Positions 3,544-54,760 of a stretch of 64,000 nt of DNA are shown here, one piece after another. Origin of the DNA: Squalus acanthias. Taxonomy: Eukaryota. Each line of letters opens with the position of its first letter. Within the stretch, counting starts at the first letter, position 1. A program made the translations under genes and the position numbers. The stretch covers positions 372,001 through 436,000 of the forward strand of contig JASTWF010000110.1 in assembly GCA_030390025.1 (NCBI GenBank), read 5' to 3'. A model generated the notes under the pieces. That model was given only the letters and a program-made list of their open reading frames with translations, was not told where the DNA came from and searched no databases.

Positions 3544-3847
3544 GACACGGTGAATATCAATGAGAAATGGGGGGAGAGAGTCTCTCTTTATAAATCAGAT
3601 TGAGGTTAATGCAAAGAAGGTAATTTAAAAAACCCAGAAGCGGAGGTGAAGTCTATAATTCATCCTTTATTTGCCTTCAGAAAGATAACCGGTCTCACGT
3701 CTTCAGGGACGGAGAAACAAGCAGGTCGACGAGGTGAATGAAGGATGGCAAATAACTGTTAACTCCTTCAGTGCTGGCTCAACTGAACTCTGCCTCATTC
3801 AGCATGTTTACCCCTGTGAAATAGTGCGTTGTTAATAGACTGGGAAC

Positions 3848-3915
3848 TGGGTGGTGTAGTGCGTTAGTGCACTGGCCTTTCACCTTCTCGGGACCTGGGT
3901 TTGAATCCATCCCAG
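3848..3915 (+). mobile_element. Isolated tRNA-derived SINE head (LF-SINE-like)
   Basis: ggtggtgtagtgcgttag...gcctttcaccttctcgggacctgggtttgaatcc: A/B-box-like, no complete cloverleaf. Confidence 0.35.
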
Positions 3916-3951
3916 TGAAGGCAGGAGCCGGGCATGTCCAGTGTTGGCTTT

Positions 3952-5268
3952 ATATAGGATATTGTCATATATCCCTTTTACCATCAAGTGGAGGTATTAT
4001 AGGATATTGTCATATATCCCTTTTACCATCAAGTGGAGGTATTATAGGATATTGTCATATATCCCTTTTACCATCAAGGGGAGGTATTATAGGATATTGT
4101 CAGATATCCCTTTTACCATCAAGTGGAGGTATTATACGATATTGTCATATATCCCTTTTACCATCAAGTGGAGGTATTATACGATATTGTCATATATCCC
4201 TTTTACCGGATGTGGAGGTATTATACGATATTGTCATATATCCCTTTTCCCTGATGTGGAGGTATTATAGGATATTGTCATATATCCCTTTTACCTGATG
4301 TGGAGGTATTATAGGATATTGTCATATATCCCTTTTACCATCAAGTGGAGGTATTACAGGATATTGTCATATATCCCTTTTACCTGATGTGGAGGTATTA
4401 TAGGATATTGTCATATATCCCTTTTACCATCAAGTGGAGGTATTATAGGATATTGTCATATATCCCTTTTACCATCAAGTGGAGGTATTATAGGATATTG
4501 TCATATATCCCTTTTACCATCAAGTGGAGGTATTATAGGATATTGTCATATATCCCTTTTATCTGATGTGGAGGTATTATAGGATATTGTCATATATCCC
4601 TTTTACCTGATGTGGAGATATTATAGGATCTTGTCATATATCCCTTTTACCATCAAGTGGAGGTATTATAGGATATTGTCATATATCCCTTTTACCTGAT
4701 GTGGAGGTATTATAGGATATTGTCATATATCCCTTTTACCATCAAGTGGAGGTATTATAGGATATTGTCATATATCCCTTTTACCTGATGTGGAGATATT
4801 ATAGGATCTTGTCATATATCCCTTTTACCATCAAGTGGAGGTATTATAGGATATTGTCATATATCCCTTTTACCATCAAGTGGAGGTATTATAGGATATT
4901 GTCATATATCCCTTTTACCTGATGTGGAGATATTATAGGATCTTGTCATATATCCCTTTTACCATCAAGTGGAGGTATTATAGGATATTGTCATATATCC
5001 CTTTTACCTGATGTGGAGGTATTATAGGATTTTGTCATATATCCCTTTTACCATCAAGTGGAGGTTTTATAGGATATTGTCATATATCCCTTTTTCCTGA
5101 TGTGGAGGTATTATAGGATATTGTCATATATCCCTTTTACCATCAAGTGAAGCTTTTATAGGATATTTTCATATATCCCTTTTACCATCAAGTGAAGGTA
5201 TTATAGGATATTGTCATATATCCCTTTTACCTGATGTGGAGGTATTATAGGATATTGTCATATATCCT
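3952..5268. repeat. 45/44-bp minisatellite, about 29-30 copies
   Basis: Unit tataggatattgtcatatatcccttttacc(atcaagt or tgatgt)ggaggtat. Confidence 0.97.
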
Positions 5269-7934: not shown

Positions 7935-8379
7935 ATATACTAGAAGTACGGGAAATAAAATAACTGATGAAAATAAAATTGTTGGTGAATTTAAAGAGAT
8001 TTATTTCCCTGCACATAGTGAGCTCCAGGCCGCCCCGATACCATGGTAACGGGACATCGAGCAGGACTGAATGAAATGGAGGAAGAGTTTCTCATGTGAT
8101 GCAGAGCTTGGGTTTGCAGCGAAAGTGCCCAGAACAAAGTGGCAAAATTATTTCAAAATAAAGATTATCAGATTGTTAGCAAAGAAATGTAAAAATCTCA
8201 CATTTAAAATAATAAATTTAGCCTTTAGGTTAATATTGTTTCTTCAAAAACAGCTCGAGTGGGTGTGTTTGAGGTATCAGTAAAATAACTGGCAGAGTGT
8301 GGAGACCGACAGAGGCCTGGGCCCGGGTCCATCTCCATCTCTCGCCATCTCCATCTCTCTCTATCTCCAGCCTCAGCCA

Positions 8380-19522: not shown

Positions 19523-20462
19523 CTGTCCTTGTCTCTCTCTGTCTCTATCTGTGTGTGTGTGTGTGTGTCTGTCCTTGTCTCTCTCTATCNNNNNNNNNNN
19601 NNNNNNNNNNNNNNNNNNNNNNNNNNNNNNNNNNNNNNNNNNNNNNNNNNNNNNNNNNNNNNNNNNNNNNNNNNNNNNNNNNNNNNNNNNNNNNNNNNNN
19701 NNNNNNNNNNNNNNNNNNNNNNNNNNNNNNNNNNNNNNNNNNNNNNNNNNNNNNNNNNNNNNNNNNNTCCCTGTCTGTGTGTGTGTGTGTGTGTGCCTGT
19801 CCCTGTCTGTGTGTGTGTGTGTGTCTGTCCCTGTCTCTCTCTGTCTCCGTGTGTCTGTGTCTGTCTGTGTGGGTGTNNNNNNNNNNNNNNNNNNNNNNNN
19901 NNNNNNNNNNNNNNNNNNNNNNNNNNNNNNNNNNNNNNNNNNNNNNNNNNNNNNNNNNNNNNNNNNNNNNNNNNNNNNNNNNNNNNNNNNNNNNNNNNNN
20001 NNNNNNNNNNNNNNNNNNNNNNNNNNNNNNNNNNNNNNNNNNNNNNNNGTCTCCGTGTGTCTGTGTGTGTGTGTGTGTGTGCCTGTCTATGTCTCTCTCT
20101 GTCTCCGTGTGTCTGTGTGTGTGTGTGTGCCTGTCCCTGTCTGTGTGTGTGTGTGTGTGTGTCCCGGTCTCTCTCTGTCCCTGTCTGTGTGGTCCCTGTC
20201 TCTGTGTGTGTGTGTGTGTGTGTGCCTGTCCCCGNNNNNNNNNNNNNNNNNNNNNNNNNNNNNNNNNNNNNNNNNNNNNNNNNNNNNNNNNNNNNNNNNN
20301 NNNNNNNNNNNNNNNNNNNNNNNNNNNNNNNNNNNNNNNNNNNNNNNNNNNNNNNNNNNNNNNNNNNNNNNNNNNNNNNNNNNNNGTCCCTGTCTGTGTG
20401 TGTGTGTGTGCCTGTCCCTGTCTCTCTATGTGTCTGACTGTCTGTCTGTCTCTGTCTCTCTC
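19200..20462. repeat. (TG)n/(TC)n low-complexity microsatellite with three N runs
   Basis: Directly visible; N runs at about 19590-19766, 19877-20047 and 20235-20385. Confidence 0.97.
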
Positions 20463-21578: not shown

Positions 21579-22064
21579 ATTCCTTCCTCTGTTTGCTCCA
21601 CAGATGCCGACTGACTGCTGAGCATTTCCTGCTCTTGTTTCAGATTTCCAGCATTTTGCGTTATTTTGCTTGTTGTTTATTTCCCAATCATTTATTACCC
21701 TAACAGTGCGCGGCATTCTGTGCAAAAGTGTTTTTCACCCTGTTCTTTCCCCTTGTGACTGGGCACTTGTCCTGGTGACCTGCCCCAGGGAGCCTCGGGG
21801 GCCACACATAGACTTAGAGCCATATTCCCATTGCTTTGTACCGGTCTCAAGCTGCTGAAACAAACAAATCTTGTTCTTCTGGTTTACACTGAAGGCAGGG
21901 GTCTCTCCAAACCTCCAGGCCCACAATATTTACAGGAAAATTGGCAAATGGCAGGAGGTTGCATGGGCTTTGAGGATGGGATTAGCAGAAGGTTCCAATT
22001 GTAGGCTGGACTGAATTCCCGGAGAGCCGGGATGTAGGATGGACGGGATTACCAGGGGGTCCCG

Positions 22065-22360
22065 GGGTCTGGGATGGACGGGATTGACTGGCTGTACAGG
22101 GGGTCCCAGGGTCGGGGATTGACTGGGTGTACAGGGGGTCCCGGGGGATTGACTGGGTGTACAGGGGGTCCCGGGGGATTGACTGGGTGTACAGGGGGTC
22201 CTGGGGGATTGACTGGGTGTACAGGGGGTCCTGGGGGATTGACTGGGTGTACAGGGGGTCCTGGGGGATTGACTGGGTGTACAGGGGGTCCTGGGTGATT
22301 GACTGGGTGTACAGGGGGTCCTGGGGTCGGGGATTGACTGGGTATACAGGGGGTCCCGGG
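22065..22360. repeat. 30-bp G-rich minisatellite, about 9 copies
   Basis: Unit gggattgactgggtgtacagggggtcctgg. Confidence 0.95.
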
Positions 22361-22704
22361 ATCTTGGACAGACTGTTGTACAGGGTGTCCCAGGCTGTAG
22401 AATGAGCTGCATGTACAGGGGGCTGTAGAATTGACCGGATATCCCCGCTCCACAACAATGCAATAAAATGACATCAATACCCAAACAAGTCTCTTTTTTA
22501 AAAACATAGCGAAATAGTGCACAACACTCCAGATTAAATTATATTACCTTTTTAAGAAATTTTACTGCTGACTCTGTGTTGTTTACGTATGTAGCAAGCT
22601 TCTTTCAACATCATTCTGAGTCTCACATAGGTGAGGTGTGAGAGCCGGGAGGGAGCAGAGGGGAAGATATCCTCGTGGAGTCGGCCCTGCTGTCTTATTA
22701 GAAT

Positions 22705-23648: not shown

Positions 23649-23824
23649 GGGGGGATCTCGACTTTGCGCAAATAGTGTGAAACAGGCGATAGCGAACCGA
23701 CAGCCCGTTTTGCATCTTCCCCCATTTTTATTTCCATTGAAGTCAATGGGGAGAGACGCAAAATGGGCTGCCGACTCGCTATCGCCCGTGAGACACCATC
23801 GCGCAAAGCGAAGATCTACCCCCC
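23649..23824. mobile_element. About 180-bp palindromic MITE with central CCATTGAAGTCAATGG
   Basis: Arms cgactttgcgc...ggcgatagcga / tcgctatcgcc...gcgcaaagcg; relatives at 17935-18096, 26687-26873, 28745-28912, 49250-49430. Confidence 0.7.
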
Positions 23825-24119
23825 AACTTTCTGAAGGACTTCAGGAACTCGCAGCCAAAGGGATCCCGACACCGGGGCTACAGTCCGAGGAGCCGACCAA
23901 TGGGGCTTGCCGGCTGCCTCGGGGTCCCTGATCGTGCTCAGTGCCACCTCGTACGTCAGTGTGTCCCATGGAGGGTAGTGGTCCTTTCACTGGATCCACT
24001 CAGGACTCCGTCAACGTGCACAAGTTCCACGGCCTCGAACGCTGCCCGTTGTAATCGGGCCAATTGTCACATTTCTCCCACCCCAAAACCCATCGTCTAT
24101 CTCGTCCTGCCGAACCAGG

Positions 24120-24399
24120 GGGCTGGATTTTGTCTTGGGGTCAGGTTGGGGTCGTGTTACCCGCATTTCGTGTTCCCCCCAAACTCCAGAGTAATGATGC
24201 AATTTTAACTTAATTGGGCAATTGAGTTCCAGCATGTGGGAACCCATGAACCAATTAATGGCTTCAGTCTGAAAGTCGCCTCTGATGATGTCATCATTGC
24301 AGGTCAGAGAGACTGTCTGGTCTCAGAGATTACTTGACTTTTGCTGTGAATGGACCTGCCTGACTTTTGCTGTGAGTGGGCCTGGATGCAAAATGAGCA

Positions 24400-24438
<39 letters not shown>

Positions 24439-24903
24439 TCCATCCAGGTCCTCTCACAGCAAGGCCAGGCAGTCTCTGAAGACATTCAAAGCAGCAGCAT
24501 CAGAGGCGACTTTCAGACCTAATACTACTACTACCTTCATCACAATACTACTACCACCTTCATCACATCTCCATTGTAATAGTGGACCTGCAGCTGATAG
24601 TTAGCTATCCACTTGTGCTCCCGCCAGGTTTCACTGGCGTATTTCACATCAGGCGTACTTCACGTCGGAAAAGGGTTAAACTAGCTAAAACGTTTCAAAA
24701 TGGCATTACAGAGCCAATTTAGGGCTTGTTAAGGGCTTTAATGGCCTCTCCTGCCTCTTGGAGGCGGGAACCCCACGACCGATTTTGTCAAAATTGCGTG
24801 GAGGCGTGTTGGAGTCGGGATGGGGTCGGGACCCCCGACCCCACAATTTTAACCCCCCACACACCTCCAAACCCGACTCCATGGGTCATTGAAAATCCAG
24901 CCC
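24120..24903. mobile_element. Harbinger-type MITE in the receptor 3' UTR
   Basis: TIRs gggctggatttt / aaaatccagccc; TSD AGG (24117-24119, 24904-24906); a truncated relative starts at about 19067. Confidence 0.8.
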
Positions 24904-24934
24904 AGGAAGTCGATCCAATTCCCTGTTGAAAGAG

Positions 24935-25093
24935 TCAGCTCAGGCGCTTCCCCCTCTCCCCCTTCTGTACAAAAGCATAGACGCTCTCTAGAGGGCCCTC
25001 TCTCGTGTCGGGTGCTGGTGCTGGTGGGTTTCTGGACTCAGGCCACTGTAGAAGGGATTACATGAGCTCACCATTCGTTGTCGACTCCCGACC
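24935..25093 (-). CDS. Exon 5: terminal cytoplasmic exon with two ITIM-like positions, interrupted by in-frame TAA at 25060-25058
   Basis: Acceptor ccttttctgttctgtgcag, phase 0; reads GRESTTNGELM*SLLQWPESRNPPAPAPDTREGPLESVYAFVQKGERGKRLS* (final TGA 24937-24935). Confidence 0.75.
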
Positions 25094-25304
25094 CTGCACA
25101 GAACAGAAAAGGGCAGCTTAGAAAATGTGAAAGTAAAAAGGCCGAGAAAACTGTTGAAAAGGCACAACAGGGCAGTCAGCGTCTAAAGCGGGAAAGATAG
25201 GTTACTGCTTCAGTTAACGTTTCATCTTTCAGAACCTCGGATGTGGAAAGTTTTCCGACAAACGGGTGCAAAATGGCTCAGCTTTTGTCTGTCTGTGCCT
25301 GTGA

Positions 25305-25872
25305 GAAACATTCGGAACAGGAGGAGGCCAGTCAGCCCCTCGAGCCTGCTCCACAAATTTAGTTAGATCATGGCTGATCTGCACCTCAACTCCAATTCGG
25401 TCGATACCCTTACCCAACAATAATCTATCGATCTCCGTCTTGAAAGCTCCAATCGTCCCCCAGCAACCACAGCCTTTTGGGGGAGAGAGTTCCAGAATTC
25501 TACTACCCTGTGTGTGAAACAGTGCTCCCTGATTTAATTCCTCAACGGCCTGCCTCTAATTTTAAGATTATGTCCCCTCGTTCTTGATTCTCCCCACCAG
25601 AGGAAGTAGTTTCTCTATATCTTCCCTACCGAATCCATTTATCATTTTAAAGACTTCAATCAGATCTACCCCAGAGAGCTGTGGAGGCGGAGTCATTGAA
25701 TGTAGTCAAGGCAGAGATAGACATATATTTGAGCTACAGGGGAGTCGAGGGTTATGGACAGCAGGCGGGAAAGTGGCGCTGAGGCCAAGATCAGATCAGC
25801 CATGATCTTATTGAATGGCGGGGCAGGCTCAAGGGGCCAAATGGCCTAATCCTGCTCCTGTTTCTTATGTTC
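25305..25872. mobile_element. Two CR1 3' fragments back to back (minus 25305-25660, plus 25665-25872)
   Basis: CR1 3' UTR motifs on opposite strands. Confidence 0.75.
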
Positions 25873-26139
25873 AGCCCTCAATCTTCTATACGTGAAGGAG
25901 AGTTGGATGTCCGGATTTTCCGTTGCAGCGTTCCTGGTACCACCAAGAGTGCATTTTGGAAAATTCTGCAACCTCCGACCTGTGATTTTCCAACCAACAA
26001 TTGCAATGGCCAGAAAACCATAGGCTGATAGCGCAGAATTCCCGGGGAGTGTCCCAGGAGTGCTGAAGTAGAGCATCTGGTCCAGATAGGCTACAGAAAC
26101 CAAGTTAAAGACCTGCGCACCATCAAGAACCATTGAGGT

Positions 26140-26580
26140 TTACAGCACAGGAGGAGGCCATTCAGCCCCTCATGCCTGTGCTGGCTCTTTTGAAAGAGCG
26201 GTCCAATTAGTTCCACTCCCCCGCTTTTCCCCCATAGCCCTGCAAATCTTTCCTTTTCAAGTATATATCCAATTCCCTTTTGAAAGTCACTATTTAATAT
26301 TGCTTCCAGTGCCCTTTCAGGCAGGGCATTCCAGTGCAAAACAACTTGCTGCATACAAAGAATTTCTGCTCATCTCCCCTCTGGTTCTTTTGCCAATTAT
26401 CTTAAATCTGTGTCCTCTGGTTGCCGCCCCTCCCACCAGTGTAAACAGTTTCTCCTTACTTATGCTATGGAAACCCCATATAATTTTGAACGCCTCCATT
26501 AAATCTCCCCTTAACCTTCTCTGCTCCAAGGACAACAATCCCAGCTTCTCTAGTCTGTCCACATAACTGAAGTCCCTCAT
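26140..26580 (-). mobile_element. CR1 3' fragment
   Basis: SYVDRLEKLGLLSLEQRRLRGDL...TRGHRFK. Confidence 0.85.
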
Positions 26581-26982
26581 CCACAATTCTCCAGGCGTTA
26601 TCCCGGTACTGGTAACTGGAAAAAAAAAAGGCATTTGGGATTGGTTTATTTCATCTGGACCGTCTCATAGTAAGTCAGACATGTGTGGGCGGAATTTTAA
26701 CCAAAGTTGCCGAGCGGGACTCACACGAGATCGGGTGGAACATCAGTTTTACACCCCGCCCAATATTACTCTCCACTGACTTCAACAGGGAGCAAAATCG
26801 AGTGGGGTATAAAACCAACATTGCTCCCAGTCCCGTCAGCTTCCCGATGGGCGGGTTAGGTTAAAATTGCCCCTTAGGAGAATCGGGCCCCCGCGGGGAG
26901 GAAGGGTCACATTTGCCGAAATTGATATTGTTTATTTTTTTGACAAGGCATCTCGACTCCGGCTAACCCACTCCCTTCTTAC

Positions 26983-27062
26983 CTCAGCCAAGTCCTGCCT
27001 CGTTCCTTCCATTGGCGGAACAGACGCTTCCATGGCAACTGAATCGTGTCGTGGGCGACAAC
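26983..27062 (-). CDS. Exon 4: first cytoplasmic exon
   Basis: Acceptor gttttaattcag, 80 nt, phase 1-0, donor GAG/gtaaga; reads GCRPRHDSVAMEASVPPMEGTRQDLAE in frame with exon 3. Confidence 0.75.
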
Positions 27063-27639
27063 CTGAATTAAAACATGCAGACAGGAAGAGAATTTCTTGC
27101 ATCACGTGTGAATGATGAAACTTCAAAGCTATTTAAAGCGTGATAAAGACACTACTGTATAAGGAGACGGCAGAAACAGACAACAGCACGACCCCGCTAA
27201 TACTTTTTAATTGGTCACCGCAAGCTCCAATTTTGTATTCGGTAATTGGACTTATGTTAATTTCTTTCAGCTAAGGAGAGTATCACCTGAGAAACTGACC
27301 AGTTATCAATTACAGACACCAAAGCCCCAATCCCTGGCTTTACATGGACAGTTAAAAGTTAAAAATTTGTCCGATATAAAGAAGTGAGACAAAGTCCAGC
27401 CAGACTGCAAGAACTTCCATGAGGTCCAATAAAGAATTTGGTGCAAACTCTGTTAAACATTTTCTAAGATCCGTTGTGCATACATTGTTTGAAGACATAC
27501 CACAATTGGAGAGAATTCAGATATCCCATAATTATAGCTTAATGTTCCCTGCCAACTATCTTTGCTGGTGTAATTCTTCTGCAGCAATTTTTCAGTAGCA
27601 GTGCCACACACTTTGTAAATGTGCAAACCCATCGTGCCT

Positions 27640-27845
27640 AGTAGTGTAAATCAATAGTTCACATCCCGTAGTTGTGCAAATCAATGGTTCATGTCCAGTC
27701 GTGGTGTACATCAACAGTTTGCACCCAGTAGTGGTGCAAATAAATAGTTCATATCTAGTCATCGTGCAAATCAATGGTTTGTGTGGAGTAGTCATGTAAT
27801 CCAATGGTTCATGTCCAGTAGTCATGTAAATCAATGGTTCATGTC
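27640..27845. repeat. Degenerate 30-bp tandem repeat, about 7 copies
   Basis: Consensus gtagtcatgtaaatcaatggttcatgtcca. Confidence 0.8.
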
Positions 27846-28134
27846 TATTCTGTTTTGTTTAGTTTAGAATGGTTAAGGTCTCCCTTCAACTAACAGATAG
27901 AGGACTATCTTACCAATGCCCTAAGTGTTCATTCCCCTAATATCCAAAACCGTAATTTCAAGGCTTCTCTCTCATTTCTTTAAGACTCACTCCCCCTACC
28001 TACAAGCCCAAGATACAACGCATCGGTCTATCATTGAATGCCAGCTCACACTGAAGTGTATTAGCTGGTGGCCACTGGTGAAATGAGGCAGATCACTAAC
28101 TGCACCGGTAGTTAAACCACCACAGCATCTGTTC

Positions 28135-28440
28135 AACAACAACAACTTGTATTCATATAGCGTCTTTAATGCAGTAAAACATCCCCAGGGGCTTCACAGG
28201 AGTGTTATAAAACAAAATTTGACACCGAGTCACATAAGGAGATATTAGGACAGATGACCAAAAGCTTGGTCAAAGAGGTGGGTTTTAAGGAGCGCCTGCA
28301 AGGAGGAGAGAGAGGTAGAGAGGCGGAGAGGTTTAGGGAGGGAATTCCAGAGTTTAGGGCCTAGGCAGCTGAAGGCACGGCCACCAATGGTTGAGCGATT
28401 AAAATCGGGGATGCTCAAGAGGGCAGAATTCGAGGAGCGT
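28135..28440 (-). mobile_element. LINE2 3' end
   Basis: caacaacaacaacttgtattcatatagcg... antisense of the L2 tail at 7090-7390. Confidence 0.85.
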
Positions 28441-29013
28441 GCAGTTGGTCCATGCGTTCATCGTTCAACATCAGTCCACTCTCAGACCATCATCCCGACC
28501 CTTCCTCCTTTCCTTATAGGTGTCGAGCTGGAAAGGGAGCCCTCTATCCCACCTAGTGACACTCAGGGAGCCAATGGGGAGAAGGGCATCCCGAGGAGCC
28601 GCATATCAGATGATCATCTGAGGTTGGAGTGAAGGACAGGAGGAGGATGGGGGCAGTGCAGGAGCTGAATGTCCCTCACTCCCCACCCCACGGGCTGAGT
28701 AAATGCTCCAGAATGGCAGTCGGCTCATTCGGTGACCTGACCTGTGACTTTAACTGTGGGCGATAGTGTAAAATCGGCAGTACTGAATTAGCTGCCCATT
28801 ATATGCCCTGACGATCTTCCTTTCCATTGAACTCAACAGAAGTGAAAATCGAACGGGAGGCCAATTTGATATCGTCCATTATAGACCATCACCCAAAGTT
28901 AAAATTAGCCCCATTTGACTAACTGGAGCCACGATTGGCACTTTCCGCCCCTCCGCAGTTTGCCAATAATCATTCACTGTGGTAAGTTCTACTCACCAAG
29001 AGCAGCCACTTAC

Positions 29014-29205
29014 CTCTGTGTGTTTTGGTCGCCAATAGGCACAAGCAGATGGCGAGGACAATGAGGAGGCACACAGCAGCAGGGACACCAATAGACATGG
29101 CAGCTGAAGGCACGGCCACCAATGGTTGAGCGATTAAAATCGGGGAGGGTGTTGTGTTGTTCTGTGTTGACCCTGAAACACTTGGGGCAGTAGGATTCTC
29201 GCTGT
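29014..29205 (-). CDS. Exon 3: Ser/Thr/Pro stalk plus transmembrane helix
   Basis: Acceptor gttttgttacag, 192 nt, phase 1-1, donor G/gtaagt. Reads DSENPTAPSVSGSTQNNTTPSPILIAQPLVAVPSAAMSIGVPAAVCLLIVLAICLCLLATKTHR: hydrophobic span followed by basic residues. Confidence 0.85.
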
Positions 29206-29413
29206 CTGTAACAAAACACTTGGATTATTCTAATAACTGGAGCCAAAACTGGAAATGACTAACAGTAGGCCTATTGGCAATGACATCATTTATAGTTAGA
29301 CCCTATTAACGTTGGAAAATTGGAGTTCATTCGGTTAAGTAAACACGGTGGGATGAAATTGGACATGGGCAGTGCGCAAAATGGGCAGTATCTCATCAGT
29401 AGCCCGTTATATC

Positions 29414-36155: not shown

Positions 36156-36239
36156 AATCAAAGGCCTTTTGGAAATTTAAATAGTTAAATGAATTCTCCT
36201 GTATCCCATGAGCTAAATAATCAGACTGTGAATTCCTAC

Positions 36240-36629
36240 CTGTCCCGGAATAGACTGTTAACGTCACATTGCCTTTACTGGCTGTGTCCCCAGCACTGCA
36301 AACAGTTATCACATACACGCCGCTGTCACTGGGCTCCAGATCCCGCAGCAACAAGGATCCATTCTCTGGGTAGATGTGGACTCTCCCTCTGTGGGAAGGA
36401 GCGACCCGCTGGTAATCTGAACAGGTATAACCGGGTCTGTCAGGGTCTGGAGAGCAGTTTGATCGGGTCAGTATCACTAATGGAGTGTCTCCGGGGAATA
36501 AAGTCCACTCTATCCTTAAAGTGGAGTAGGGAGTGGGTGTGGAGTAGGAGCCAAGGAGAAGGACAGACTGGTTCACGGTCCCGTTCACTTCTCTCTGACC
36601 GACGCTCACAGTAACATTGCTTCCAGAGG
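36240..36629 (-). CDS. Exon 2: Ig V-set domain, HEPACAM/CEACAM-N/CD2-like (no B-F disulfide)
   Basis: Acceptor ttttattttgttgcag, 390 nt, phase 1-1, donor G/gtagga. Translation has V-frame hallmarks VNGTVNQSVLL, IEW, RGRVHIYPENGSLLLRDLEPSDSGVYVITV, NVTLTV; several N-glycosylation sequons. Confidence 0.92.
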
Positions 36630-36999
36630 CTGCAACAAAATAAAAAAAATAAATGAGTTTCCAATCACATTATGCAGTGTTATCCCATCAGTAAGTTAAA
36701 TTCTAAACACCCGGCTTTTCAGAAAGAGAAACAGAGAAGGTCCGAGACAGTCAGAAGGTCAGGCAGCGTCGGTGGAGAGATCGCGAGTCAGTCGCCGTTT
36801 CAGCTATTGACCCTGCCTCATGACTGAGAGATATTACAGATAGTACAGCACTTAAAAAGGAACAGCACAAAGGAAGGAGGAGAGGGGGGGGAAACACAAT
36901 AACCCACACACAGGAAAAGTAATAGAATCAGTATTGCCAACCTCACCGCCTCATAATTCAAGAGACAAACTCTTAAAAAAAATTAAAATCTGACTTGGG

Positions 37000-38555: not shown

Positions 38556-40621
38556 AACTCAGAAAAGAAAAATCTTGCATTTATATCGGTCCTTTCACAC
38601 CCAAATCCCATTAGTTTGAAATCACAAAATACCTGCAATTTCATCATAGAATAATGAAGTGAGAATTTACATTAATACGTGCCTTTATCTCCTCGGCGTG
38701 TCCCCAAACATTTTCTCTACAGAACAATGACTGCACAGAACAAAGAGAAAGACTGCAGGGAGGACAGCCACAATGCAGACCAAGGCACCACAAGGCTCAG
38801 AAGGCTGTCCAAGGCTGGGGTGGGGGGGGGGCGCAATAGAAATGTGGTAGTAACAGGGGACTCTATAATTAGGGGGATAGATAACATCCTCTGCAGCCAT
38901 GAACGAGAATCCCGAAGGGTGTGTTGCCTACCTGGTGCTAGGGTAAGGGATATCTCACGGCGGCTGAAGAGGAACTTGGAAAGGGAGGGGGTAAATCCAG
39001 TTGTCGTGGTCCATGTTGGAACAAACGATATAAGTAGGAACAGGGAGGATGTCCTGCTGAAAGAGTATCAGGAGCTAGGATCTAAATTAAAGAGCAGGAC
39101 CTCGAGGGTAATAATATTACCTGAGCCACGTGCAAATTGGTATACAAGCAGACAGATCAGGAAAATTAACACGTGGCTAAAGGGCTGGTGTGGGAAAGAG
39201 GGGTTATTTTTCATGGGACACTGGCACCAGTTCTGGGAGAGGAAGGAGCTGTACCGATAGGGTCCACCTGAACCGGGATAGGACCCGTGTCCTAGCGGAA
39301 AGGGTAAATAGAGAGATGGAAAAGGTTTAAGCTGCTAAGATGGGGGGAGGGATCTATAAGAAATGTAACCAGCCTAAATATAAACAAAACAAGAAAAGAG
39401 AGCATAGGAAAGAATAAAGTAAGGGAGAACATTGATGGCAAGGGAATAGATAGAGTTCTTAAACAGGAGTCTAAAAAGGTGGTTAAACATAAAGTGAGAG
39501 GAAATCCTATTAAAAATGAGTTAAACTGTTTGTACAGCAATGCACACAGTGTCCGTAATAATACAGGGGAGCTGGAGGCAATCATGCATTGCGAGGAACC
39601 AGACATAGTAGGGATTACTGAGACATGGCTACAGAAAAATCAGGACTGGGAATTAAACATTGCAGGGTATAACATATTTAGAAAAGATAGAGAGGGAAAA
39701 GGGGAAGGTGGAGTAGCTGTACTTACTAGAGATAACATGATGGCAGTAGAAAAAAGGGATGCAGAGTTCAGTAAGACAAAAATAGAATCCATATGGATAG
39801 AGATAAAAGATAATAAAGGATCAATCACACTAATAGGTGTAGTCTACAGACCACCTAATAGTGGAAGGGAGGTGGAGGAAGAAATATGCAGATAAATTAG
39901 GGAAATTAATAAAAAACATAGAATAATAATCATGGGGGATTTCAACTACCCCGATATTAATTCGACAGAAGAGGTAGGTAAAGAGGATAAGGGAATGGAG
40001 TTCCTACAATGTCTACAGGACTCCTTGCTAACCCAATATGTAAAAAGCCCAACAAGGGAGGATTCGCTATTGGTTCTAGTAATGGGGAATGAACCAGAGC
40101 AGATAAGAGAAGTAAAAGTAGGGGAACATATAGGCAATAGTGACCGTAATATAATACGCTTTAAGATGATAATTGAGAAGGACATAAGTATGACAAAACC
40201 AGGGTAATAGATTGGAGAAAAGCTGATTTTGAGGGGCTGAGAATAGAACTTCGGGAAAAAATGGGCAACAATATTAGCAAACAACAATGTAGAACAGCAA
40301 TGGGAAACATTTAAAGCGGTGTTCAACAGAGTGCAGGAAAAATATATTCGGCTAAAAGGAAAAAACAAACTAAACAATAATGAGACTCCATGGATGAATA
40401 AAGCCATAATTGAACAATTGAGAGTAAGGAAAGAGGCATAGATTAAGTACATAGACAGCAGGGGAGTGCAAGATAAGTGAGAATACAAAAAGATTAGGAG
40501 AGAAGTAAAGAAAAAAACAATTTGGGAGGCAAAGAGGAATTATGAAATTAAATTATCAAGGAACATAAAACAAAATAGTAAAATATTTTATCGGCACATC
40601 AATAAAAAAAGGAAGGTTGGG

Positions 40622-43752: not shown

Positions 43753-43885
43753 GAAATGAGATAAGTGACCATCTAGCCTGTTCTGGAGGCTTTGGTTGAA
43801 GGATGAATTCTGGCTAGTTCACTGGAGAATGCTCGGCCTTATCTTTGAGTAGTTCCTCGGGATCTTTTAACTTCACTTGAAGAGG

Positions 43886-44228
43886 TAGAGGAAGACTCCA
43901 CAGTATAGAAGAAGACCCCACAGTGTGGAGGACGACCCCACAGTGTGGAGGAAGACCCCACAGTGTGGAGGAAGACCCCACAGTGTGGAGGAAGACCCCA
44001 CAGTGTGGAGGAAGACCCCACAGTGTAGAGGAAGACCCCACAGTGTAGAGGAAGACCCCACAGTGTAGAGGAAAACTCCACAGTGTAGTGGAAGACCCCA
44101 CAGTGTAGAGGAAGACCCCACAGTGTAGAGGAAGTCCCCACAGTGTAGAGGAAAACTCCACAGTGTAGTGGAAGACCCCACAGTGTAGAGGAAGCCGCCA
44201 CAGTGTAGAGGAAGACTCCACAGTGTAG
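43886..44228. repeat. 20-bp minisatellite, about 17 copies, inside a degraded Deu-SINE (43760-44305, minus)
   Basis: Unit gaagaccccacagtgt(a/g)gag; flanks continue as SINE (gggatctttta... / cagtgtagcactccctcagtactg). Confidence 0.93.
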
Positions 44229-44703
44229 CACTCCCTCAGTACTGAATTATCAGCCCAGATGATGTGCTCAAATCCTGGGTGAACCCACAATCTTCTGACT
44301 CAAAAATACCTGTTCCAACTGATGCAAGTTAACACAGTTATACATTTTAACACAGCACAGCCCAGAACATCTGACACATTAGTAATGAAATAACAATTGA
44401 ATAAAGACTTGTGAGAGATCAATGAATTGATTACTCAGTCCCAGCTACAGTTAGAGGTTCAGGTAACTCACAGTGTGGGACAGTAACTGGAGGGCAGATG
44501 GTGAGCGGGAATCTACCTGTTCACAGGAGCCCGACTGAATGAGACTGAAGATCTCCGGGAATGAGCTGAGCTTCATTCACTTTAGATCAGTGAGTGATTG
44601 AACCCCAGCCCCGATTAAACACAGTCAGCAGAAGTCACACAGAGTCAGGGGGAACTCAGAAATAGAATTACATTTATACTGGAAGTGAAAGAAAACAACT
44701 TAC

Positions 44704-44776
44704 CGGAGAGGGAGATAAAATAACTGATGAGAGGGAAAATGTTGGCGAATTGAAACAGATTTATTTCCCTGCCCAT
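44704..44776 (-). CDS. Exon 1 (signal peptide) of a single-V-domain Ig-superfamily receptor
   Basis: ATG at 44776; 73 nt = MGREINLFQFANIFPLISYFISLS + 1 nt, followed by perfect donor gtaagt (44703-44698). Phase 1 joins in frame to the V exon (...ISLS-A-SGSNVT...). Confidence 0.7.
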
Positions 44777-49013: not shown

Positions 49014-49112
49014 ACTTGCCAGGGAGGGATGTAAATAACTGCTGAAAGGGGAAATGTTGGTGAATTTAAAGGGGAGGTTTATTTCTCTAATGTAGCTCAG
49101 TAACTCAGACAT
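49014..49112 (-). pseudogene. Third, degenerate copy of the leader exon
   Basis: Aligns with 44698-44780 (REINLPFKFTNISPFSSYL versus REINLFQFANIFPLISYF); donor changed to gcaagt, phase shifted, homologous ATG lost. Confidence 0.6.
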
Positions 49113-51647: not shown

Positions 51648-53837
51648 TTATGATCTAAAATTGTTGAACTCGATATTGAGTCCAGAGGGCTGTAGCGTGC
51701 CTAAACGAAAGATGAGGTGCTGTTCCTCGAGCTTACGCTGAGCTTCCGTGGAACAGTGTAATAGGCCGAGGACGGTGAGGTCAGAGTGGGAGTGAAGCGG
51801 TGAATTAAAGTGACAGGCCACCGGGAGCTCGGGGTCCCCCTTACGGACTGAACGGAGGTGTTCCACAAAGCGGTCACCCAATCTGCGTTTGGTCTCCCCA
51901 ATGTAGAGGAGACCACATCGTGAGCAGCGAATACAGTATACTAAATTGCAGGAAGTACAAGTAAATCGCTGTTTCACCTGGAAGGGGTGTTTGGGGCCCT
52001 GGACAGTGGGAAGAGGGGAGGTGTAAGGGCATGTGTAGCATCTCCTGCGCGTGCACGGGAAGGTGCCGGGCGAAGGGGAAGGGGTGCTGGGGGTGGTAGA
52101 GGAGTGGACTAGGGTGTCGCGGAGGGAGCGGTCCCTGCGGAATGCTGAAAGGGGAGGTGAGGGGAAGATGTGTTTGGTGGTGGGATCACGCTGGAGGTGG
52201 CGGAAATGGCGGAGGATGATCCGTTGAATGTGGAGGCTGGTGGGGTGAAAGGTGAGGACAAGGGGAACCCTATCGTGGTTCCGGGAGGGAGGGGCAGGGG
52301 TGAGGGCAGAAGTGCGGGAGATAGAACGGACACGGTCGAGGGCCGTGTCGACCACGGTAGAGGGGAATCCTCGGTTGAGGAAAAAGGAAGACATGTCGGA
52401 AGCACTGGTATGGAAGGTGGCATCATCAGAGCAGATGCGGCGGAGACGGAGAAACTGGGAGAATGGAATAGAGTCCTTACAGGAGGCGGGGTGGGAGGAA
52501 GTGTAGTCCAGGTAGCTGTGGGAGTCAGTGGGCTTGTAGTGAATGTTAGTCAATAACCTATCCCCAGAGATGGAGATGGAGAAGTCGAGGAAGGGAAGGG
52601 AAGAGTCGGAGATGGACCATGTGAAGGTGAGGGAAGGGTGGAAATTGGAAGCATAGTGAATGAAATGTTCTAGTTCAGGGCGAGAGCAGGAGACGGCACC
52701 GATACAGTCATCAATGTACCGGAAAAAGAGGTGAGGGAGGGGACCCGAGTAGGACTGGAACAAAGAGTGTTCCACATATCCCACGAAAAGGCAGGCATAG
52801 CTAGGACCCATGCGGGTACCCATAGCAACACCTTTAATTTGGAGGAAATGGGTAGAGTCAAAGGAGAAGTTGTTCAATGTGAGAACAAGTTCAGCCAGGC
52901 GGAGGAGGGTGGTGGTGGATGGGGACTGGTTGGGCCTCTGTTCAAGGAAGAAGCGGAGCGCCCTCAGGCCATCCTGGTGGGGAATGGAGGTGTAGAGGGA
53001 TTGTACGTCCATAGTGAAGAGGAGACGGTTGGGGCCGGGAAACTGGAAACTGTTAAAATGGCGGAGGGCATCGGAAGAGTCGCGGATGTAGGTGGGAAGA
53101 GACTGGACAAGGGGAGAAAAAATAGAGTCGAGATAGGAAGAGATAAGTTCCGTGGGGCAAGAACAGGCTGAAACGATGGGTCTACCGGGGCAGTCCTGTT
53201 TGTGGATCTTGGGAAGGAGGTAGAAGCGGGCTGTGCGCGGTTGGGGAACTATGAGGTTGGCGGCCGTGGGGGGAAGATCTCCAGAGGAGATGAGGTCAGT
53301 GACGGTCTTGGACACGGTGGCTTGATGTTCAGTAGTGGGGTCATGGTCCAGGTGGAGGTAGGAGGAGGTGTCAGAGAGTTGGCGTTCAACTTCCGCTAGG
53401 TAGAGGTCGGTTCGCCAAACAACAACAGCGCCACCCTTGTCAGCAGGTTTAATGACAATGTCAGGGTTGGATCGGAGAGAATGGAGTGCTGCAAGTTCAG
53501 AGGGAGGTAGGTTGGAGTGAGTGAGGGGAGCAGAGAAATTGAGCTGGCCGATGTCACGGCGGCAGTTAGCAATGAAAAGATCTAGAGAGGGTAAGAGGCC
53601 AGAGGGAGGGGTCCAGGTGGAACGAGAATTCTGAAAGCGGGAGAAAGGGTCAGCCGTGCGGGGGGAAGACTCCTGGCCAGAGAAGTGGGCACGGAGACGG
53701 AGGCGGCGGAAAAAGAGCTCAGCATCGTGCCGAGCTCGAAATTCATTGAGATGGGGGCGTAAGGGGATGAAGGTCAGGCCTTTGCTGAGGACTGATCGTT
53801 CGGAGTCAGAGAGGGGAAGGTCAGAGGGGATAGTGAA
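51648..53837 (-). CDS. Penelope reverse transcriptase + GIY-YIG endonuclease, about 729 uninterrupted codons, native start missing
   Basis: IKPADKGGAVVV, LPKIHK, GRPIVS, MDVQSLYTSIP, GVAMG, RYIDD, linker CTRRRCYTC, LVYCIRCSRCGLLYIGET, EQHLIFRLGTLQPSGLN. Confidence 0.93.
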   Translation of the reverse strand, partial: FTIPSDLPLSDSERSVLSKGLTFIPLRPHLNEFRARHDAELFFRRLRLRAHFSGQESSPRTADPFSRFQNSRSTWTPPSGLLPSLDLFIANCRRDIGQLNFSAPLTHSNLPPSELAALHSLRSNPDIVIKPADKGGAVVVWRTDLYLAEVERQLSDTSSYLHLDHDPTTEHQATVSKTVTDLISSGDLPPTAANLIVPQPRTARFYLLPKIHKQDCPGRPIVSACSCPTELISSYLDSIFSPLVQSLPTYIRDSSDALRHFNSFQFPGPNRLLFTMDVQSLYTSIPHQDGLRALRFFLEQRPNQSPSTTTLLRLAELVLTLNNFSFDSTHFLQIKGVAMGTRMGPSYACLFVGYVEHSLFQSYSGPLPHLFFRYIDDCIGAVSCSRPELEHFIHYASNFHPSLTFTWSISDSSLPFLDFSISISGDRLLTNIHYKPTDSHSYLDYTSSHPASCKDSIPFSQFLRLRRICSDDATFHTSASDMSSFFLNRGFPSTVVDTALDRVRSISRTSALTPAPPSRNHDRVPLVLTFHPTSLHIQRIILRHFRHLQRDPTTKHIFPSPPLSAFRRDRSLRDTLVHSSTTPSTPSPSPGTFPCTRRRCYTCPYTSPLPTVQGPKHPFQVKQRFTCTSCNLVYCIRCSRCGLLYIGETKRRLGDRFVEHLRSVRKGDPELPVACHFNSPLHSHSDLTVLGLLHCSTEAQRKLEEQHLIFRLGTLQPSGLNIEFNNFRS

Positions 53838-53845
53838 ACCAGAAA

Positions 53846-54252
53846 CCAGAACCTTAACCAGTATCCCGGCCAGAACCTTAACCAGTATCCCAGCCAAAAC
53901 CTTAACCAGTATCCCAGCCAGAACCTTAACCAGTATCCCAGCCAGAACCTTAACCAGTATCCCAGCCAGAACCTTAGACCAGTATCCCTGCCAGAACCTT
54001 AACCAGTATCCCAGCCACAACCTTAACCAATATCCCAGCCAGAACCTTAACCAGTATCCCAGCCAGAACCTTAACCAGTATCCCAGCCACAACCTTAACC
54101 AATATCCCAGCCAGAACCTTAACCAGTATCCCAGCCAGAACCTTAACCAGTATCCCGGCCAGAACCTTAACCAGTATCCCGGCCAGAACCTTAACCAGTA
54201 TCCCGGCCAGAACCTTAACCAGTATCCCGACCAGAACCTTAACCAGTATTCC
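53846..54252. repeat. 24-bp minisatellite, about 17 copies
   Basis: Unit ccagaaccttaaccagtatcccag. Confidence 0.96.
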
Positions 54253-54254
54253 AG

Positions 54255-54760
54255 GCTAAATACTTAAAATGTAATATTTAATCACTTATTTTCAAAACCA
54301 TTTAGTGATGTCATGATACAGTATCACACAGGGGCTGGGTTTCTGTTATTTAAAGCAGTGACCGTGTGAACGGAATTTAAAACTGCCAGAATACATTGCG
54401 TCAGTGGTCCTCTTCTTTGAAATTATGAAGGGGTTCAATGGGGTGGAGGTGATTGAGTCCATCACAGTGGGGCATAAATATAAGATAGCCACTAACAGAT
54501 CAAAGAAAGAATTTAGAAGGAATGTCTTTATACAGCCAGTGATGAGATTGTGGAACTTGCTGTCATGTGGAGTGGTTGTAGCAGACAGCATTGATGCAGT
54601 TATGGGGAGGCTTGATGCTCACATGTGGGAGAAGGGAATAGAGGGATACGGAGGAGGAGGTAACTAGAGTGTGAGGAGGCTCGTGTGGAGTATAAACACT
54701 GGCGTGGACCGGTTGGGTCGAATGGCCTGTTTCTGTGCTGTAGATTCTATGTCATTTTAT
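54255..54760 (+). mobile_element. Family X fragment followed by a CR1 3' fragment (54410-54760)
   Basis: Parallels 48030-48410. Confidence 0.7.

What the first reader, a model, noticed from the sequence alone, without database searches (positions are those of the whole stretch)
24968..25066. Stop codon sits exactly on the tyrosine of the first ITIM
Seen: the last exon reads ...GELM-TAA-SLLQ...ESVYAFV...; the frame stays open for 40 more codons after the TAA (25060-25058). One base change (TAA to TAT/TAC) gives LMYSLL, a canonical (I/L/V/S)xYxx(L/V) ITIM, 27 residues before a second motif, SVYAFV. Known: tandem ITIM/ITIM-like motifs at this kind of spacing recruit SHP-1/2 in CEACAM1, Siglecs and PD-1. 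Inference: a recent nonsense change removed both motifs. Because it lies in the last exon it should escape NMD and leave a membrane-bound, non-signalling (decoy) receptor. A base-call error or rare allele is also possible.
Basis: partly seen in the sequence, partly recalled or inferred. Interest (0 to 1): 0.85.

Follow-up and report, generated by a model that had tools for sequence, protein, structure and literature searches.

The report
Stop codon replaces shark receptor's ITIM tyrosine
A shark immune-receptor gene that is otherwise intact carries a stop codon exactly where all its relatives in other sharks and rays have the signalling tyrosine, so its product should sit in the membrane without inhibitory signalling; this way of losing a signalling motif is already known from other receptor families.

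Summary
On the minus strand, a five-exon gene for a single-V-domain receptor ends in an exon that reads ...NGELM-TAA-SLLQW...ESVYAFV.... In all, 25 stored shark and ray proteins of this family keep that tyrosine motif.

All other exons are open with canonical splice sites. The V domain shows no excess change, and the 40 post-stop codons are no more diverged than expected.

Contigs of a closely related organism (two samples) cover the exon. One form shows no listed change at the stop codon, so an assembly error is unlikely, although the table was cut. A second, divergent form could not be read.

No reads of the source animal and no clear RNA were available. Expression, zygosity, use of a second in-frame acceptor-like site 48 nt downstream, and the "decoy" role therefore remain untested. 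Only the first motif is a canonical ITIM across the family.

Stops that remove ITIMs are already in print for KIR3DL3 and CEACAM1-like genes. This is a new member of a known kind, of moderate to low interest. The scan's other notes on this gene are from this same window.

The parts
44704..44776 (-). Exon 1 coding part: ATG at 44776, leader MGREINLFQFANIFPLISYFISLS, donor G|GTAAGT, phase 1
   Evidence: tblastn to orthologue N-termini; junction read
36240..36629 (-). Exon 2: V-set Ig domain (129 whole codons), acceptor TTGTTGCAG|CC, donor ACAG|GTAGGA, phase 1 on both sides
   Evidence: Pfam V-set E 6e-8, 33.3 bits against cut-off 26. 65-75% identical to shark orthologues. No excess private changes. 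End branch 0.2, equal to the median
29014..29205 (-). Exon 3: stalk and transmembrane segment (…SIGVPAAVCLLIVLAICLCLLATKTHR), acceptor TTACAG|AC, donor AGAG|GTAAGT, phase 1 on both sides; no charged residue inside the hydrophobic run
29099..29146 (-). 48-bp repeat-derived piece inside exon 3, in frame (SPILIAQPLVAVPSAA), 100% identical to 28364-28411 in the next intron
   Evidence: blastn; very high word depth in this bin; orthologues lack these residues
26983..27062 (-). Exon 4: first cytoplasmic exon (CRPRHDSVAMEASVPPMEGTRQDLAE), acceptor AATTCAG|GT, donor GCTGAG|GTAAGA, ends in phase 0
25061..25093 (-). Last exon, 11 codons before the stop (GRESTTNGELM), acceptor TGTGCAG|GGT
25058..25060 (-). 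TAA at the position of the conserved first tail tyrosine
   Evidence: '*' opposite Tyr in 6 of 6 tail HSPs; no change listed here in the relative's form-2 contigs
24938..25057 (-). 40 open codons after the stop: the ancestral tail, including the second Tyr motif
24968..24985 (-). SVYAFV, second tyrosine motif (Tyr codon 24979-24977)
   Evidence: aligned with [IV]YA[FL] of the orthologues
24935..24937 (-). TGA ending the ancestral frame, four codons later than in 10 of 10 shark orthologues
25046..25057 (-). Second acceptor-like site tcccttctacag, 48 nt (16 codons, in frame) downstream of the first; if used it would skip the TAA
   Evidence: read; no RNA evidence; 0 of 21 orthologue proteins with the second motif lack the first
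24737..24742 (-). ATTAAA, nearest polyadenylation-like signal after the TGA (another AATAAA begins at 23732)
   Evidence: pattern search; function not tested

Best explanation
This is a genuine germline nonsense substitution, one base changed in a TAY tyrosine codon to give TAA. It hits the first cytoplasmic tyrosine of the inhibitory-type member of an unnamed elasmobranch family of single-V-domain receptors.

The gene is otherwise intact. It should therefore give a 256-codon precursor with a leader, a V domain, a stalk, an uncharged transmembrane helix and a cytoplasmic stub of about 38 residues without any tyrosine. Such a protein can still bind ligand but cannot be tyrosine-phosphorylated or dock SH2 phosphatases.

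I read it as a young loss of inhibitory signalling: a signalling-dead receptor at the start of pseudogenisation, or at most a neutral tail-less variant. I do not read it as a proven, selected decoy.

Shown: the stop, its position on a conserved tyrosine, the intact remainder of the gene, and the undecayed tail.
Inferred: NMD escape, surface expression, and loss of SHP-1/2 recruitment.
For: - Letters and frame.
- The stop aligns with Tyr in 6 of 6 orthologue tail HSPs. Tyr is invariant in alignment A1 (Y256).
- 25 of the 106 family hits carry the motif with Tyr. These come from 11 shark and 7 ray species by the sources' names.
- All five exons are open, with AG/GT sites and phases 1,1,1,0.
- In the V domain the window has 2 private changes at shark-invariant sites, against 0-7 in 11 other sharks, and 0 when rays are added. 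Its end branch is 0.2, equal to the median.
- The post-stop segment is 41-58% identical to 10 orthologues, with z from -1.5 to +2.1 against the expectation from V-domain identity.
- In a close relative (organism A; 1.4-5% different in unique parts), contigs from two samples cover 24932-25102. Form 2 (X1 record 2, X3 record 18, X5 record 25) has changes listed at 25056 and 25072 but none at 25058-25060.
- There is no charged residue in the TM run.
[quoted passage not shown] Terrapin CEACAM1-like genes are predicted to lose their ITIM exons (PMC13278318, passages read).
Against: - No reads from the source animal were found. The best run holds 0.40 of the sampled words, so zygosity and base-call quality in the assembled individual are unknown.
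- The table of differences was cut (115 rows hidden). One (X1, X3) or two (X5) differences of the form-2 contigs are unlisted. The second form in sample S1 (9 differences, 8 of them hidden) could carry Tyr.
- No run is on record as RNA. The possible RNA run X11 gives only depth-2 contigs, one of them colinear with the intron, so expression and splicing are unknown.
- An in-frame acceptor-like site 48 nt downstream would bypass the stop.
- The intact upstream ORF and V-domain conservation fit a selected tail-less receptor as well as a young pseudogene.
Confidence: 0.55

Rival explanations
1. Selected tail-less decoy or ligand sink. The truncation is maintained by selection, so the protein binds the family's ligand (or a pathogen that exploits the inhibitory receptor) without delivering an inhibitory signal.
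For: The ectodomain is as conserved as in species with intact tails. All upstream exons and splice sites are intact. The stop appears to be shared with a relative that differs by 1.4-1.7% in intron sequence. The family looks like a paired-receptor family, with short-tailed members that carry an Arg inside the TM (P0004, P0023, P0025, P0034; tails seen). A tail-less single-V decoy has been proposed for terrapin CEACAM1-like genes (PMC13278318).
Against: By my own rough estimate, not a call, the time implied by about 1-2% divergence is too short for a neutral 768-nt ORF to have decayed visibly, so the intact ORF does not discriminate. There is no expression data and no known ligand. No intact paralogue was seen in the window that the decoy could shadow; only leader-like exon copies were found. 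The post-stop frame shows 3 non-synonymous and 1 synonymous listed difference plus a 2-bp indel between the window and the relative, which is expected under either reading.
Confidence: 0.22
2. Assembly or base-call error, or a rare allele of the sequenced individual; the species' normal gene has Tyr and is an intact inhibitory receptor.
For: No reads of the source individual could be laid. The locus is polymorphic in the relative, with two forms of the last exon in sample S1 that share only one listed difference. The change is a single base.
Against: Independent contigs from two samples of a relative cover the codon and list no change there, while changes 2 and 12 bases away in the same contigs are listed. 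The flanking sequence is unique (word depth about 17-25) and is not a homopolymer.
Confidence: 0.1
3. Rescue at the RNA or translation level. Either the second acceptor-like site (exon start 25045) gives a tail that lacks the first motif but keeps SVYAFV, or the stop is read through.
For: The site tcccttctacag|TGG is in frame, 48 nt downstream, and has a CTCAT branch-like element 17 nt upstream of its AG. The post-stop frame is open and conserved.
Against: The upstream acceptor has the stronger pyrimidine tract and would be met first. The acceptor-like letters are simply the codons for S-L-L-Q, which are conserved as protein. 0 of 21 stored orthologue proteins with the second motif lack the first. 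The only contig of the possible RNA run over this place is continuous through the 48 nt (X11 record 10, 24993-25095). From general knowledge, not tested here, TAA followed by T is a poor read-through context.
Confidence: 0.07

Closest known systems
Orthologous uncharacterised shark genes (Scyliorhinus canicula LOC119975690, Carcharodon carcharias LOC121291131, Mustelus asterias LOC144496850, Heterodontus francisci and Heptranchias perlo entries; P0001-P0007)
   Same: Colinear leader, V exon, stalk/TM, two cytoplasmic exons. V domain 65-75% identical. Tail alignable through the stop.
   Different: All of them have Tyr where the window has TAA and end four residues after ...QK. The window also has a 48-bp repeat-derived insert in the stalk. 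No paper in the searched library names four of these loci.
Human KIR3DL3 second ITIM (PMC6360152, passages read)
   Same: An inhibitory Ig receptor in which a single-nucleotide event creates a stop in the third codon of an ITIM, removing the motif while the rest of the receptor is kept.
   Different: There the cause is an insertion, it removes only the second ITIM, and the first is conserved, so inhibitory function is retained. Here a substitution removes both tyrosines. The families are unrelated.
Terrapin single-IgV CEACAM1-like genes without ITIM/ITSM exons (PMC13278318, preprint, passages read)
   Same: Single V domain plus TM. ITIM-coding part lost by a small mutation. Proposed as a non-signalling decoy. 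Expression data also lacking.
   Different: The mechanism there is a mutated TM-exon donor with read-through into the intron. Membership of the shark family in CEACAM is not established here.
Short-tailed activating partners of paired receptors (KIR2DS/3DS type; the general concept as in PMC3533184, search listing only)
   Same: A cytoplasmic tail cut short of the ITIMs, with the ectodomain retained.
   Different: Those carry a charged TM residue for an ITAM adaptor. The window's TM has none, whereas other members of this shark family do (P0004, P0023, P0025, P0034).

Membership tests
Shark/ray single-V ITIM-tailed receptor family (LOC119975690 type) | V-set ectodomain closely similar to family members | tested here: met
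   E 2e-50 to 1e-42 and 65-73% identity to 7 shark proteins; Pfam V-set 6e-8; placed inside the shark clade with support 83/99
Shark/ray single-V ITIM-tailed receptor family (LOC119975690 type) | Same exon order, and tail homologous in the same frame | tested here: met
   tblastn HSPs for leader, V, stalk/TM, cyt-1 and last exon in order; phases 1,1,1,0.
ITIM-bearing inhibitory receptor (functional class) | At least one cytoplasmic [ILVS]xYxx[ILV] in the encoded protein | tested here: not met
   The Tyr codon is TAA. The encoded cytoplasmic pieces, exon 4 and the 11 pre-stop codons, contain no Tyr
ITIM-bearing inhibitory receptor (functional class) | Phosphotyrosine-dependent recruitment of SHP-1/SHP-2/SHIP | not testable with these tools
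   Needs biochemistry. That SHP-2 is conserved in sharks is taken from the title and abstract start of PMC12151841 only
Activating short-tail paired receptor | Charged residue within the transmembrane helix for an ITAM adaptor | tested here: not met
   The TM run IGVPAAVCLLIVLAICLCLLA has no D/E/K/R
CEACAM family | N domain of V-set type without the canonical B-F disulfide and with significant similarity to CEACAM N domains | tested here: inconclusive
   No Cys at the B and F strand positions in the window or in 16 relatives (alignment). That CEACAM N domains lack this disulfide is recalled. Profile hits to CEACAM6/8/7 are E 3.5e-6 to 3e-4, but JAML (2e-8) and LRIG1 (8e-7) score better. With the single sequence, SCN4B is best at 1.7e-5. 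The atlas gives CEACAM19-like and TIGIT-like clusters among leads
CEACAM family | Synteny with the CEACAM locus neighbours and taxon distribution as published | tested here: inconclusive
   No flanking genes were identified in the window. PMC13278318 (passages) says fowl lack intact CEACAM genes, yet this family has hits in Gallus, Numida, Phasianus and Lagopus, which argues for a separate family. The paper's supplementary tables could not be seen
NMD-insensitive premature stop | Stop located in the last exon, with no exon junction downstream | tested here: met
   The TAA is 33 nt after the last modelled junction, and the orthologue proteins end in this exon. The NMD rule itself is established knowledge. 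mRNA stability was not tested

The most novel reading that the evidence does not exclude
The locus carries an old, possibly balanced polymorphism of signalling-competent and tail-less alleles that is shared between related shark lineages. The relative's sample S1 holds two forms of the last exon whose depths add up to single-copy depth, and which share only one listed difference from the window. One form keeps the TAA; the other could not be read.
Probability: 0.08. Interest if true: 0.6.

Novelty: new member of a known kind. Interest (0 to 1): 0.33.

Why it matters
If the truncated form is expressed, it would be a natural, membrane-anchored, signalling-dead version of an inhibitory receptor in a cartilaginous fish. 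That would be a clean natural experiment for asking what the conserved tail tyrosines of this undescribed elasmobranch/sauropsid receptor family do. It would also show that inhibitory receptors lost their ITIMs by point mutation this deep in vertebrate history. In itself the event is an ordinary step of birth-and-death evolution in immune receptor families, and similar cases are in print for KIR and CEACAM genes. The family, not the stop codon, is the less explored object. It has ITIM-tailed members, members with a charged TM and short tails, and ray members with duplicated tail modules.

Tried and rejected
- **Different frame or acceptor.** This was rejected once exon 4 (27062-26983, ending in phase 0) was found by tblastn.
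- **GGTGAG as a donor.** A donor inside the last exon, paired with the downstream acceptor-like site, would give a 26-nt intron, which is too short. Rejected.
- **dN/dS before and after the stop.** I used protein-level substitutes instead. These have low power for recent events.
- **Divergence of the last exon versus intron, window against the relative.** 5 of 171 against 15 of 895, Fisher p = 0.35. Uninformative.
- **Reads.** The single search found no holder above 0.40 of 48 sampled words and none on record as RNA. Much of what was held is a high-copy repeat 3' of the gene (depth bins). The read-laying table was cut, so the second form in sample S1 stayed unread.
- **Pfam on other ORFs.** Three other ORFs (TM exon, 24014-24322, 38688-38927) gave nothing above cut-off.
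- **Earlier notes by words.** These gave two other receptor genes on other pieces of this genome, not relevant here.
- **Papers.** Four searches. 0 papers hold the four LOC identifiers searched. Those of PMC13278318 and PMC3628338 may list cartilaginous-fish CEACAM genes that bear on family assignment.
- **Recalled resemblance.** I recall that the family's tail resembles the mammalian CEACAM1 ITIM/ITSM tail, including the spacing. I did not test this, and I give no letters from memory.
- **Spliced model.** Every search and comparison was made exon by exon, and the length of 256 codons is arithmetic from the exon coordinates (73+390+192+80+33 nt).

Full report
**What is in the sequence.** Read on the minus strand, an acceptor tgtgcag is followed from 25093 by GGT CGG GAG TCG ACA ACG AAT GGT GAG CTC ATG TAA. 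The TAA occupies 25060-25058. The same frame then stays open for 40 codons (25057-24938) to a TGA at 24937-24935. It contains SVYAFV at 24985-24968, with the tyrosine 27 codons after the TAA. An open run of 40 codons is not unusual in itself: 5023 of 20000 shuffles of these 120 nt have none in frame. The case therefore rests on homology and on the gene model.

**The gene.** The window is repeat-rich vertebrate DNA, with many LINE reverse-transcriptase ORFs and three N runs at 19590-20385 that I left alone. An ORF at 36157-36669 holds a V-set Ig domain (Pfam E 6e-8, 33.3 bits, cut-off 26). A search with that exon found 9 proteins among 39 candidates. Seven are shark proteins with 65-73% identity, named by their sources as uncharacterised or 'HEPACAM-like'.

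tblastn of the nine proteins against the window, together with the junction letters, gives a five-exon gene:

| Exon | Coordinates | Content | Phase |
|---|---|---|---|
| 1 | 44776-44704 | leader | ends in phase 1 |
| 2 | 36629-36240 | V domain | 1 / 1 |
| 3 | 29205-29014 | stalk and transmembrane helix | 1 / 1 |
| 4 | 27062-26983 | first cytoplasmic exon | ends in phase 0 |
| 5 | from 25093 | last exon | starts in phase 0 |

All acceptors end in AG and all donors begin with GT. All searches were exon by exon, and the length before the stop (73+390+192+80+33 = 768 nt, 256 codons) is arithmetic.

**The stop sits on a conserved tyrosine.** The tail HSPs of six orthologue proteins run through the stop and put '*' opposite Tyr in all six (E 2.6e-10 to 0.025). 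The orthologues read ...NGELTYSMLQW...NDELTYCLIQW...NSELVYSLLHW...SELTYSFLQW and ...NGEVTYSYLHW, where the window reads ...NGELM*SLLQW.

- In the alignment of five full-length orthologues this Tyr is invariant (Y256).
- A profile search with that alignment returned 106 proteins at E ≤ 1e-5 among 8000 scored candidates. They come from sharks, rays, many birds and a turtle.
- 25 of the 106 carry the motif with Tyr in their last 110 residues. By the sources' names, these represent 11 shark and 7 ray species.
- The other 81 are bird and turtle proteins with other tyrosine tails, short-tailed paralogues, or partial entries. I did not align these to the stop.
- One manta ray module reads LMYSLLQL.

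The nonsense change is therefore derived, and it removes a residue kept across elasmobranchs.

**How canonical are the motifs?** The first motif fits [ILVS]xYxx[ILV] in 21 of 25 tails. A second tyrosine lies 22-27 residues downstream in 22 of the 25. It fits the ITIM consensus in only 1 of the 24 tails that have a downstream tyrosine, and fits the ITSM consensus in none, because the +3 position is usually A, P or S. The window's SVYAFV happens to fit. 'Tandem ITIM' is therefore right for the window's letters but overstated for the family. The second site is a conserved tyrosine motif of unproven type.

**Is the rest of the gene decaying?**
- At V-domain sites invariant in the other 11 sharks, the window has 2 private changes (others 0-7). 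With five rays added it has 0.
- In a maximum-likelihood tree its end branch is 0.2, equal to the median. It sits at the base of the shark clade.
- The 40 post-stop residues are 41-58% identical to ten shark orthologues. This matches the expectation from V-domain identity (z from -1.5 to +2.1).
- The only oddities are a four-residue C-terminal extension that none of the ten orthologues has and a 48-bp in-frame, repeat-derived insert in the stalk. The insert is 100% identical to 28364-28411 in the next intron and confirms the scan's note s1-890709.

Neither oddity disables the gene. These tests would only detect long-standing relaxation. They show that the stop is not old on the scale of shark orders.

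I laid three DNA runs (two samples) and one possible RNA run of 'organism A' on 24600-29300.

- In unique parts their contigs differ from the window by 1.4-5% (for example 15 of 895, 5 of 369, 6-9 of 173). Most differences are shared by both samples. Organism A is therefore a close relative or a divergent lineage, not the source.
- The last exon is covered (24932-25102) by two forms. Form 2 is present in both samples (X1 record 2, X3 record 18, X5 record 25).
- The listed changes of form 2 are 24980 (synonymous), 24990 (L>P), 25032 (R>I), 25056 (S>F, the codon next to the stop) and 25072 (G>S), plus a 2-bp insertion behind 24953 that shifts the frame at the very end.
- No change is listed at 25058-25060. 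Rows with the same support 2 and 12 bases away are shown, so a change at the stop in these contigs would very probably have been shown too.
- The table was cut, however (115 rows hidden), and one or two differences of these contigs are unlisted.
- Form 1 occurs in sample S1 only. Its depth (10) and that of form 2 (6.8) add up to single-copy depth, which suggests an allele. It has 9 differences, of which 8 are hidden, so its codon is unknown.
- The possible RNA run gives two depth-2 contigs over 24993-25175, one of them colinear with the intron, some depth over exon 4, and none over unique intron bins. This is a faint hint of transcription in the relative and says nothing on splicing.

I conclude that an assembly error is unlikely (about 0.1) and that the stop probably predates the split from organism A.

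**Mechanism.** The encoded protein would keep the leader, V domain, stalk and an uncharged transmembrane helix. It would end after a cytoplasmic stub of about 38 residues with no tyrosine. Without tyrosine it cannot be phosphorylated by Src-family kinases or dock SH2-domain phosphatases. That step is established knowledge of ITIM receptors, not a result here. Because the stop lies in the last exon, the mRNA should escape nonsense-mediated decay; this too is an established rule that I did not test.

The TM has no charged residue, so this is not an activating partner. Other family members do look like such partners: P0004, P0023, P0025 and P0034 have short tails and an Arg inside the hydrophobic segment. 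My best reading (0.55) is a young, signalling-dead receptor at the start of gene loss. A selected decoy (0.22) fits the same data and cannot be separated from it without population and expression data.

**A way round the stop?** The codons for S-L-L-Q after the stop form a plausible acceptor (tcccttctacag, AG at 25047-25046) exactly 48 nt downstream of the real one. Its use would skip the stop and keep SVYAFV. There is no evidence for it. None of the 21 stored orthologue proteins with the C-terminal motif lacks the first motif. The upstream acceptor has the better pyrimidine tract.

**Comparison with what is known.** The V domain matches solved structures only weakly. With the single sequence, sodium-channel β4 scores 1.7e-5 and CEACAM N domains 1e-3 to 3e-2. 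With the profile, JAML scores 2e-8, LRIG1 8e-7 and CEACAM6/8 3.5e-6 to 4e-5. The atlas offers CEACAM19-like and TIGIT-like clusters as leads.

The family lacks the canonical B-F cysteines. I recall that CEACAM N domains also lack them. However, PMC13278318 (passages read) states that fowl lack intact CEACAM genes, whereas this family has hits in several galliforms. I therefore do not file it under CEACAM.

For the event itself there are direct precedents:
- Terrapin single-V CEACAM1-like genes are predicted to lose their ITIM/ITSM exons through a donor mutation, and are discussed as a new type of decoy (PMC13278318, passages read).
- In primate CD300C, premature stops are read as pseudogenisation (PMC12447643, passages read).

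No paper in the searched library holds the four LOC identifiers of the shark orthologues.

**Verdict.** This is a new member of a known kind, with interest about 0.33.

Noticed in passing
window 29099-29146 and 28364-28411: A 48-bp piece of a high-copy repeat lies in frame inside the stalk/TM exon (SPILIAQPLVAVPSAA). It is 100% identical to a copy in the next intron, and further copies at 87-93% lie elsewhere in the window. The orthologues lack these residues. The relative's contigs across this exon carry 30 gap letters, of which only 7 are listed, so the relative may differ here.
   Followed up: partly
window 7957-8016 and 49035-49112 (minus strand): Two further copies of the leader exon (MCREINLFKFTNNFIFISYF... 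and ...REINLPFKFTNISPFSSY...) without a clear GT donor in the same place. They could be relics, alternative first exons, or the start of a tandem paralogue whose V exon would lie beyond the window's low end.
   Followed up: partly
window 24932-25102, contigs of runs X1/X3: The relative's sample S1 holds two forms of the last exon that share only one listed difference from the window. Their depths (10 and 6.8) add up to single-copy depth. Sample S2 shows one form only. This is unusually divergent for alleles.
   Followed up: partly
window 29039 and 24953: Relative to the window, organism A has a 6-bp in-frame deletion inside the transmembrane coding part and a 2-bp insertion in the (GA)n-like run near the end of the post-stop frame. 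The two lineages therefore end the ancestral frame differently, and both end later than the ten orthologues.
   Followed up: no
stored proteins P0004, P0023, P0025, P0034; P0021, P0022, P0026; P0001, P0017-P0019: The family looks like a paired-receptor family. Some members have short tails and an Arg inside the TM segment. Ray members carry two tandem copies of the whole two-tyrosine tail module. Several annotated isoforms skip the stalk/TM exon, which is in frame, and so predict soluble forms.
   Followed up: partly
window 51651-54263; also 3825-4580, 21933-22543, 43817-44299: Long tandem arrays that give repetitive open frames on several strands (for example an 871-codon frame of GYWLRFW-like units). 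They look like minisatellites, not genes.
   Followed up: no
window 24600-24913: The 3' flank of the gene is a very high-copy repeat (word depth about 600,000-980,000 in the relative's DNA runs) and is shared in part by several other organisms' runs. This is why the run search found many weak holders.
   Followed up: no
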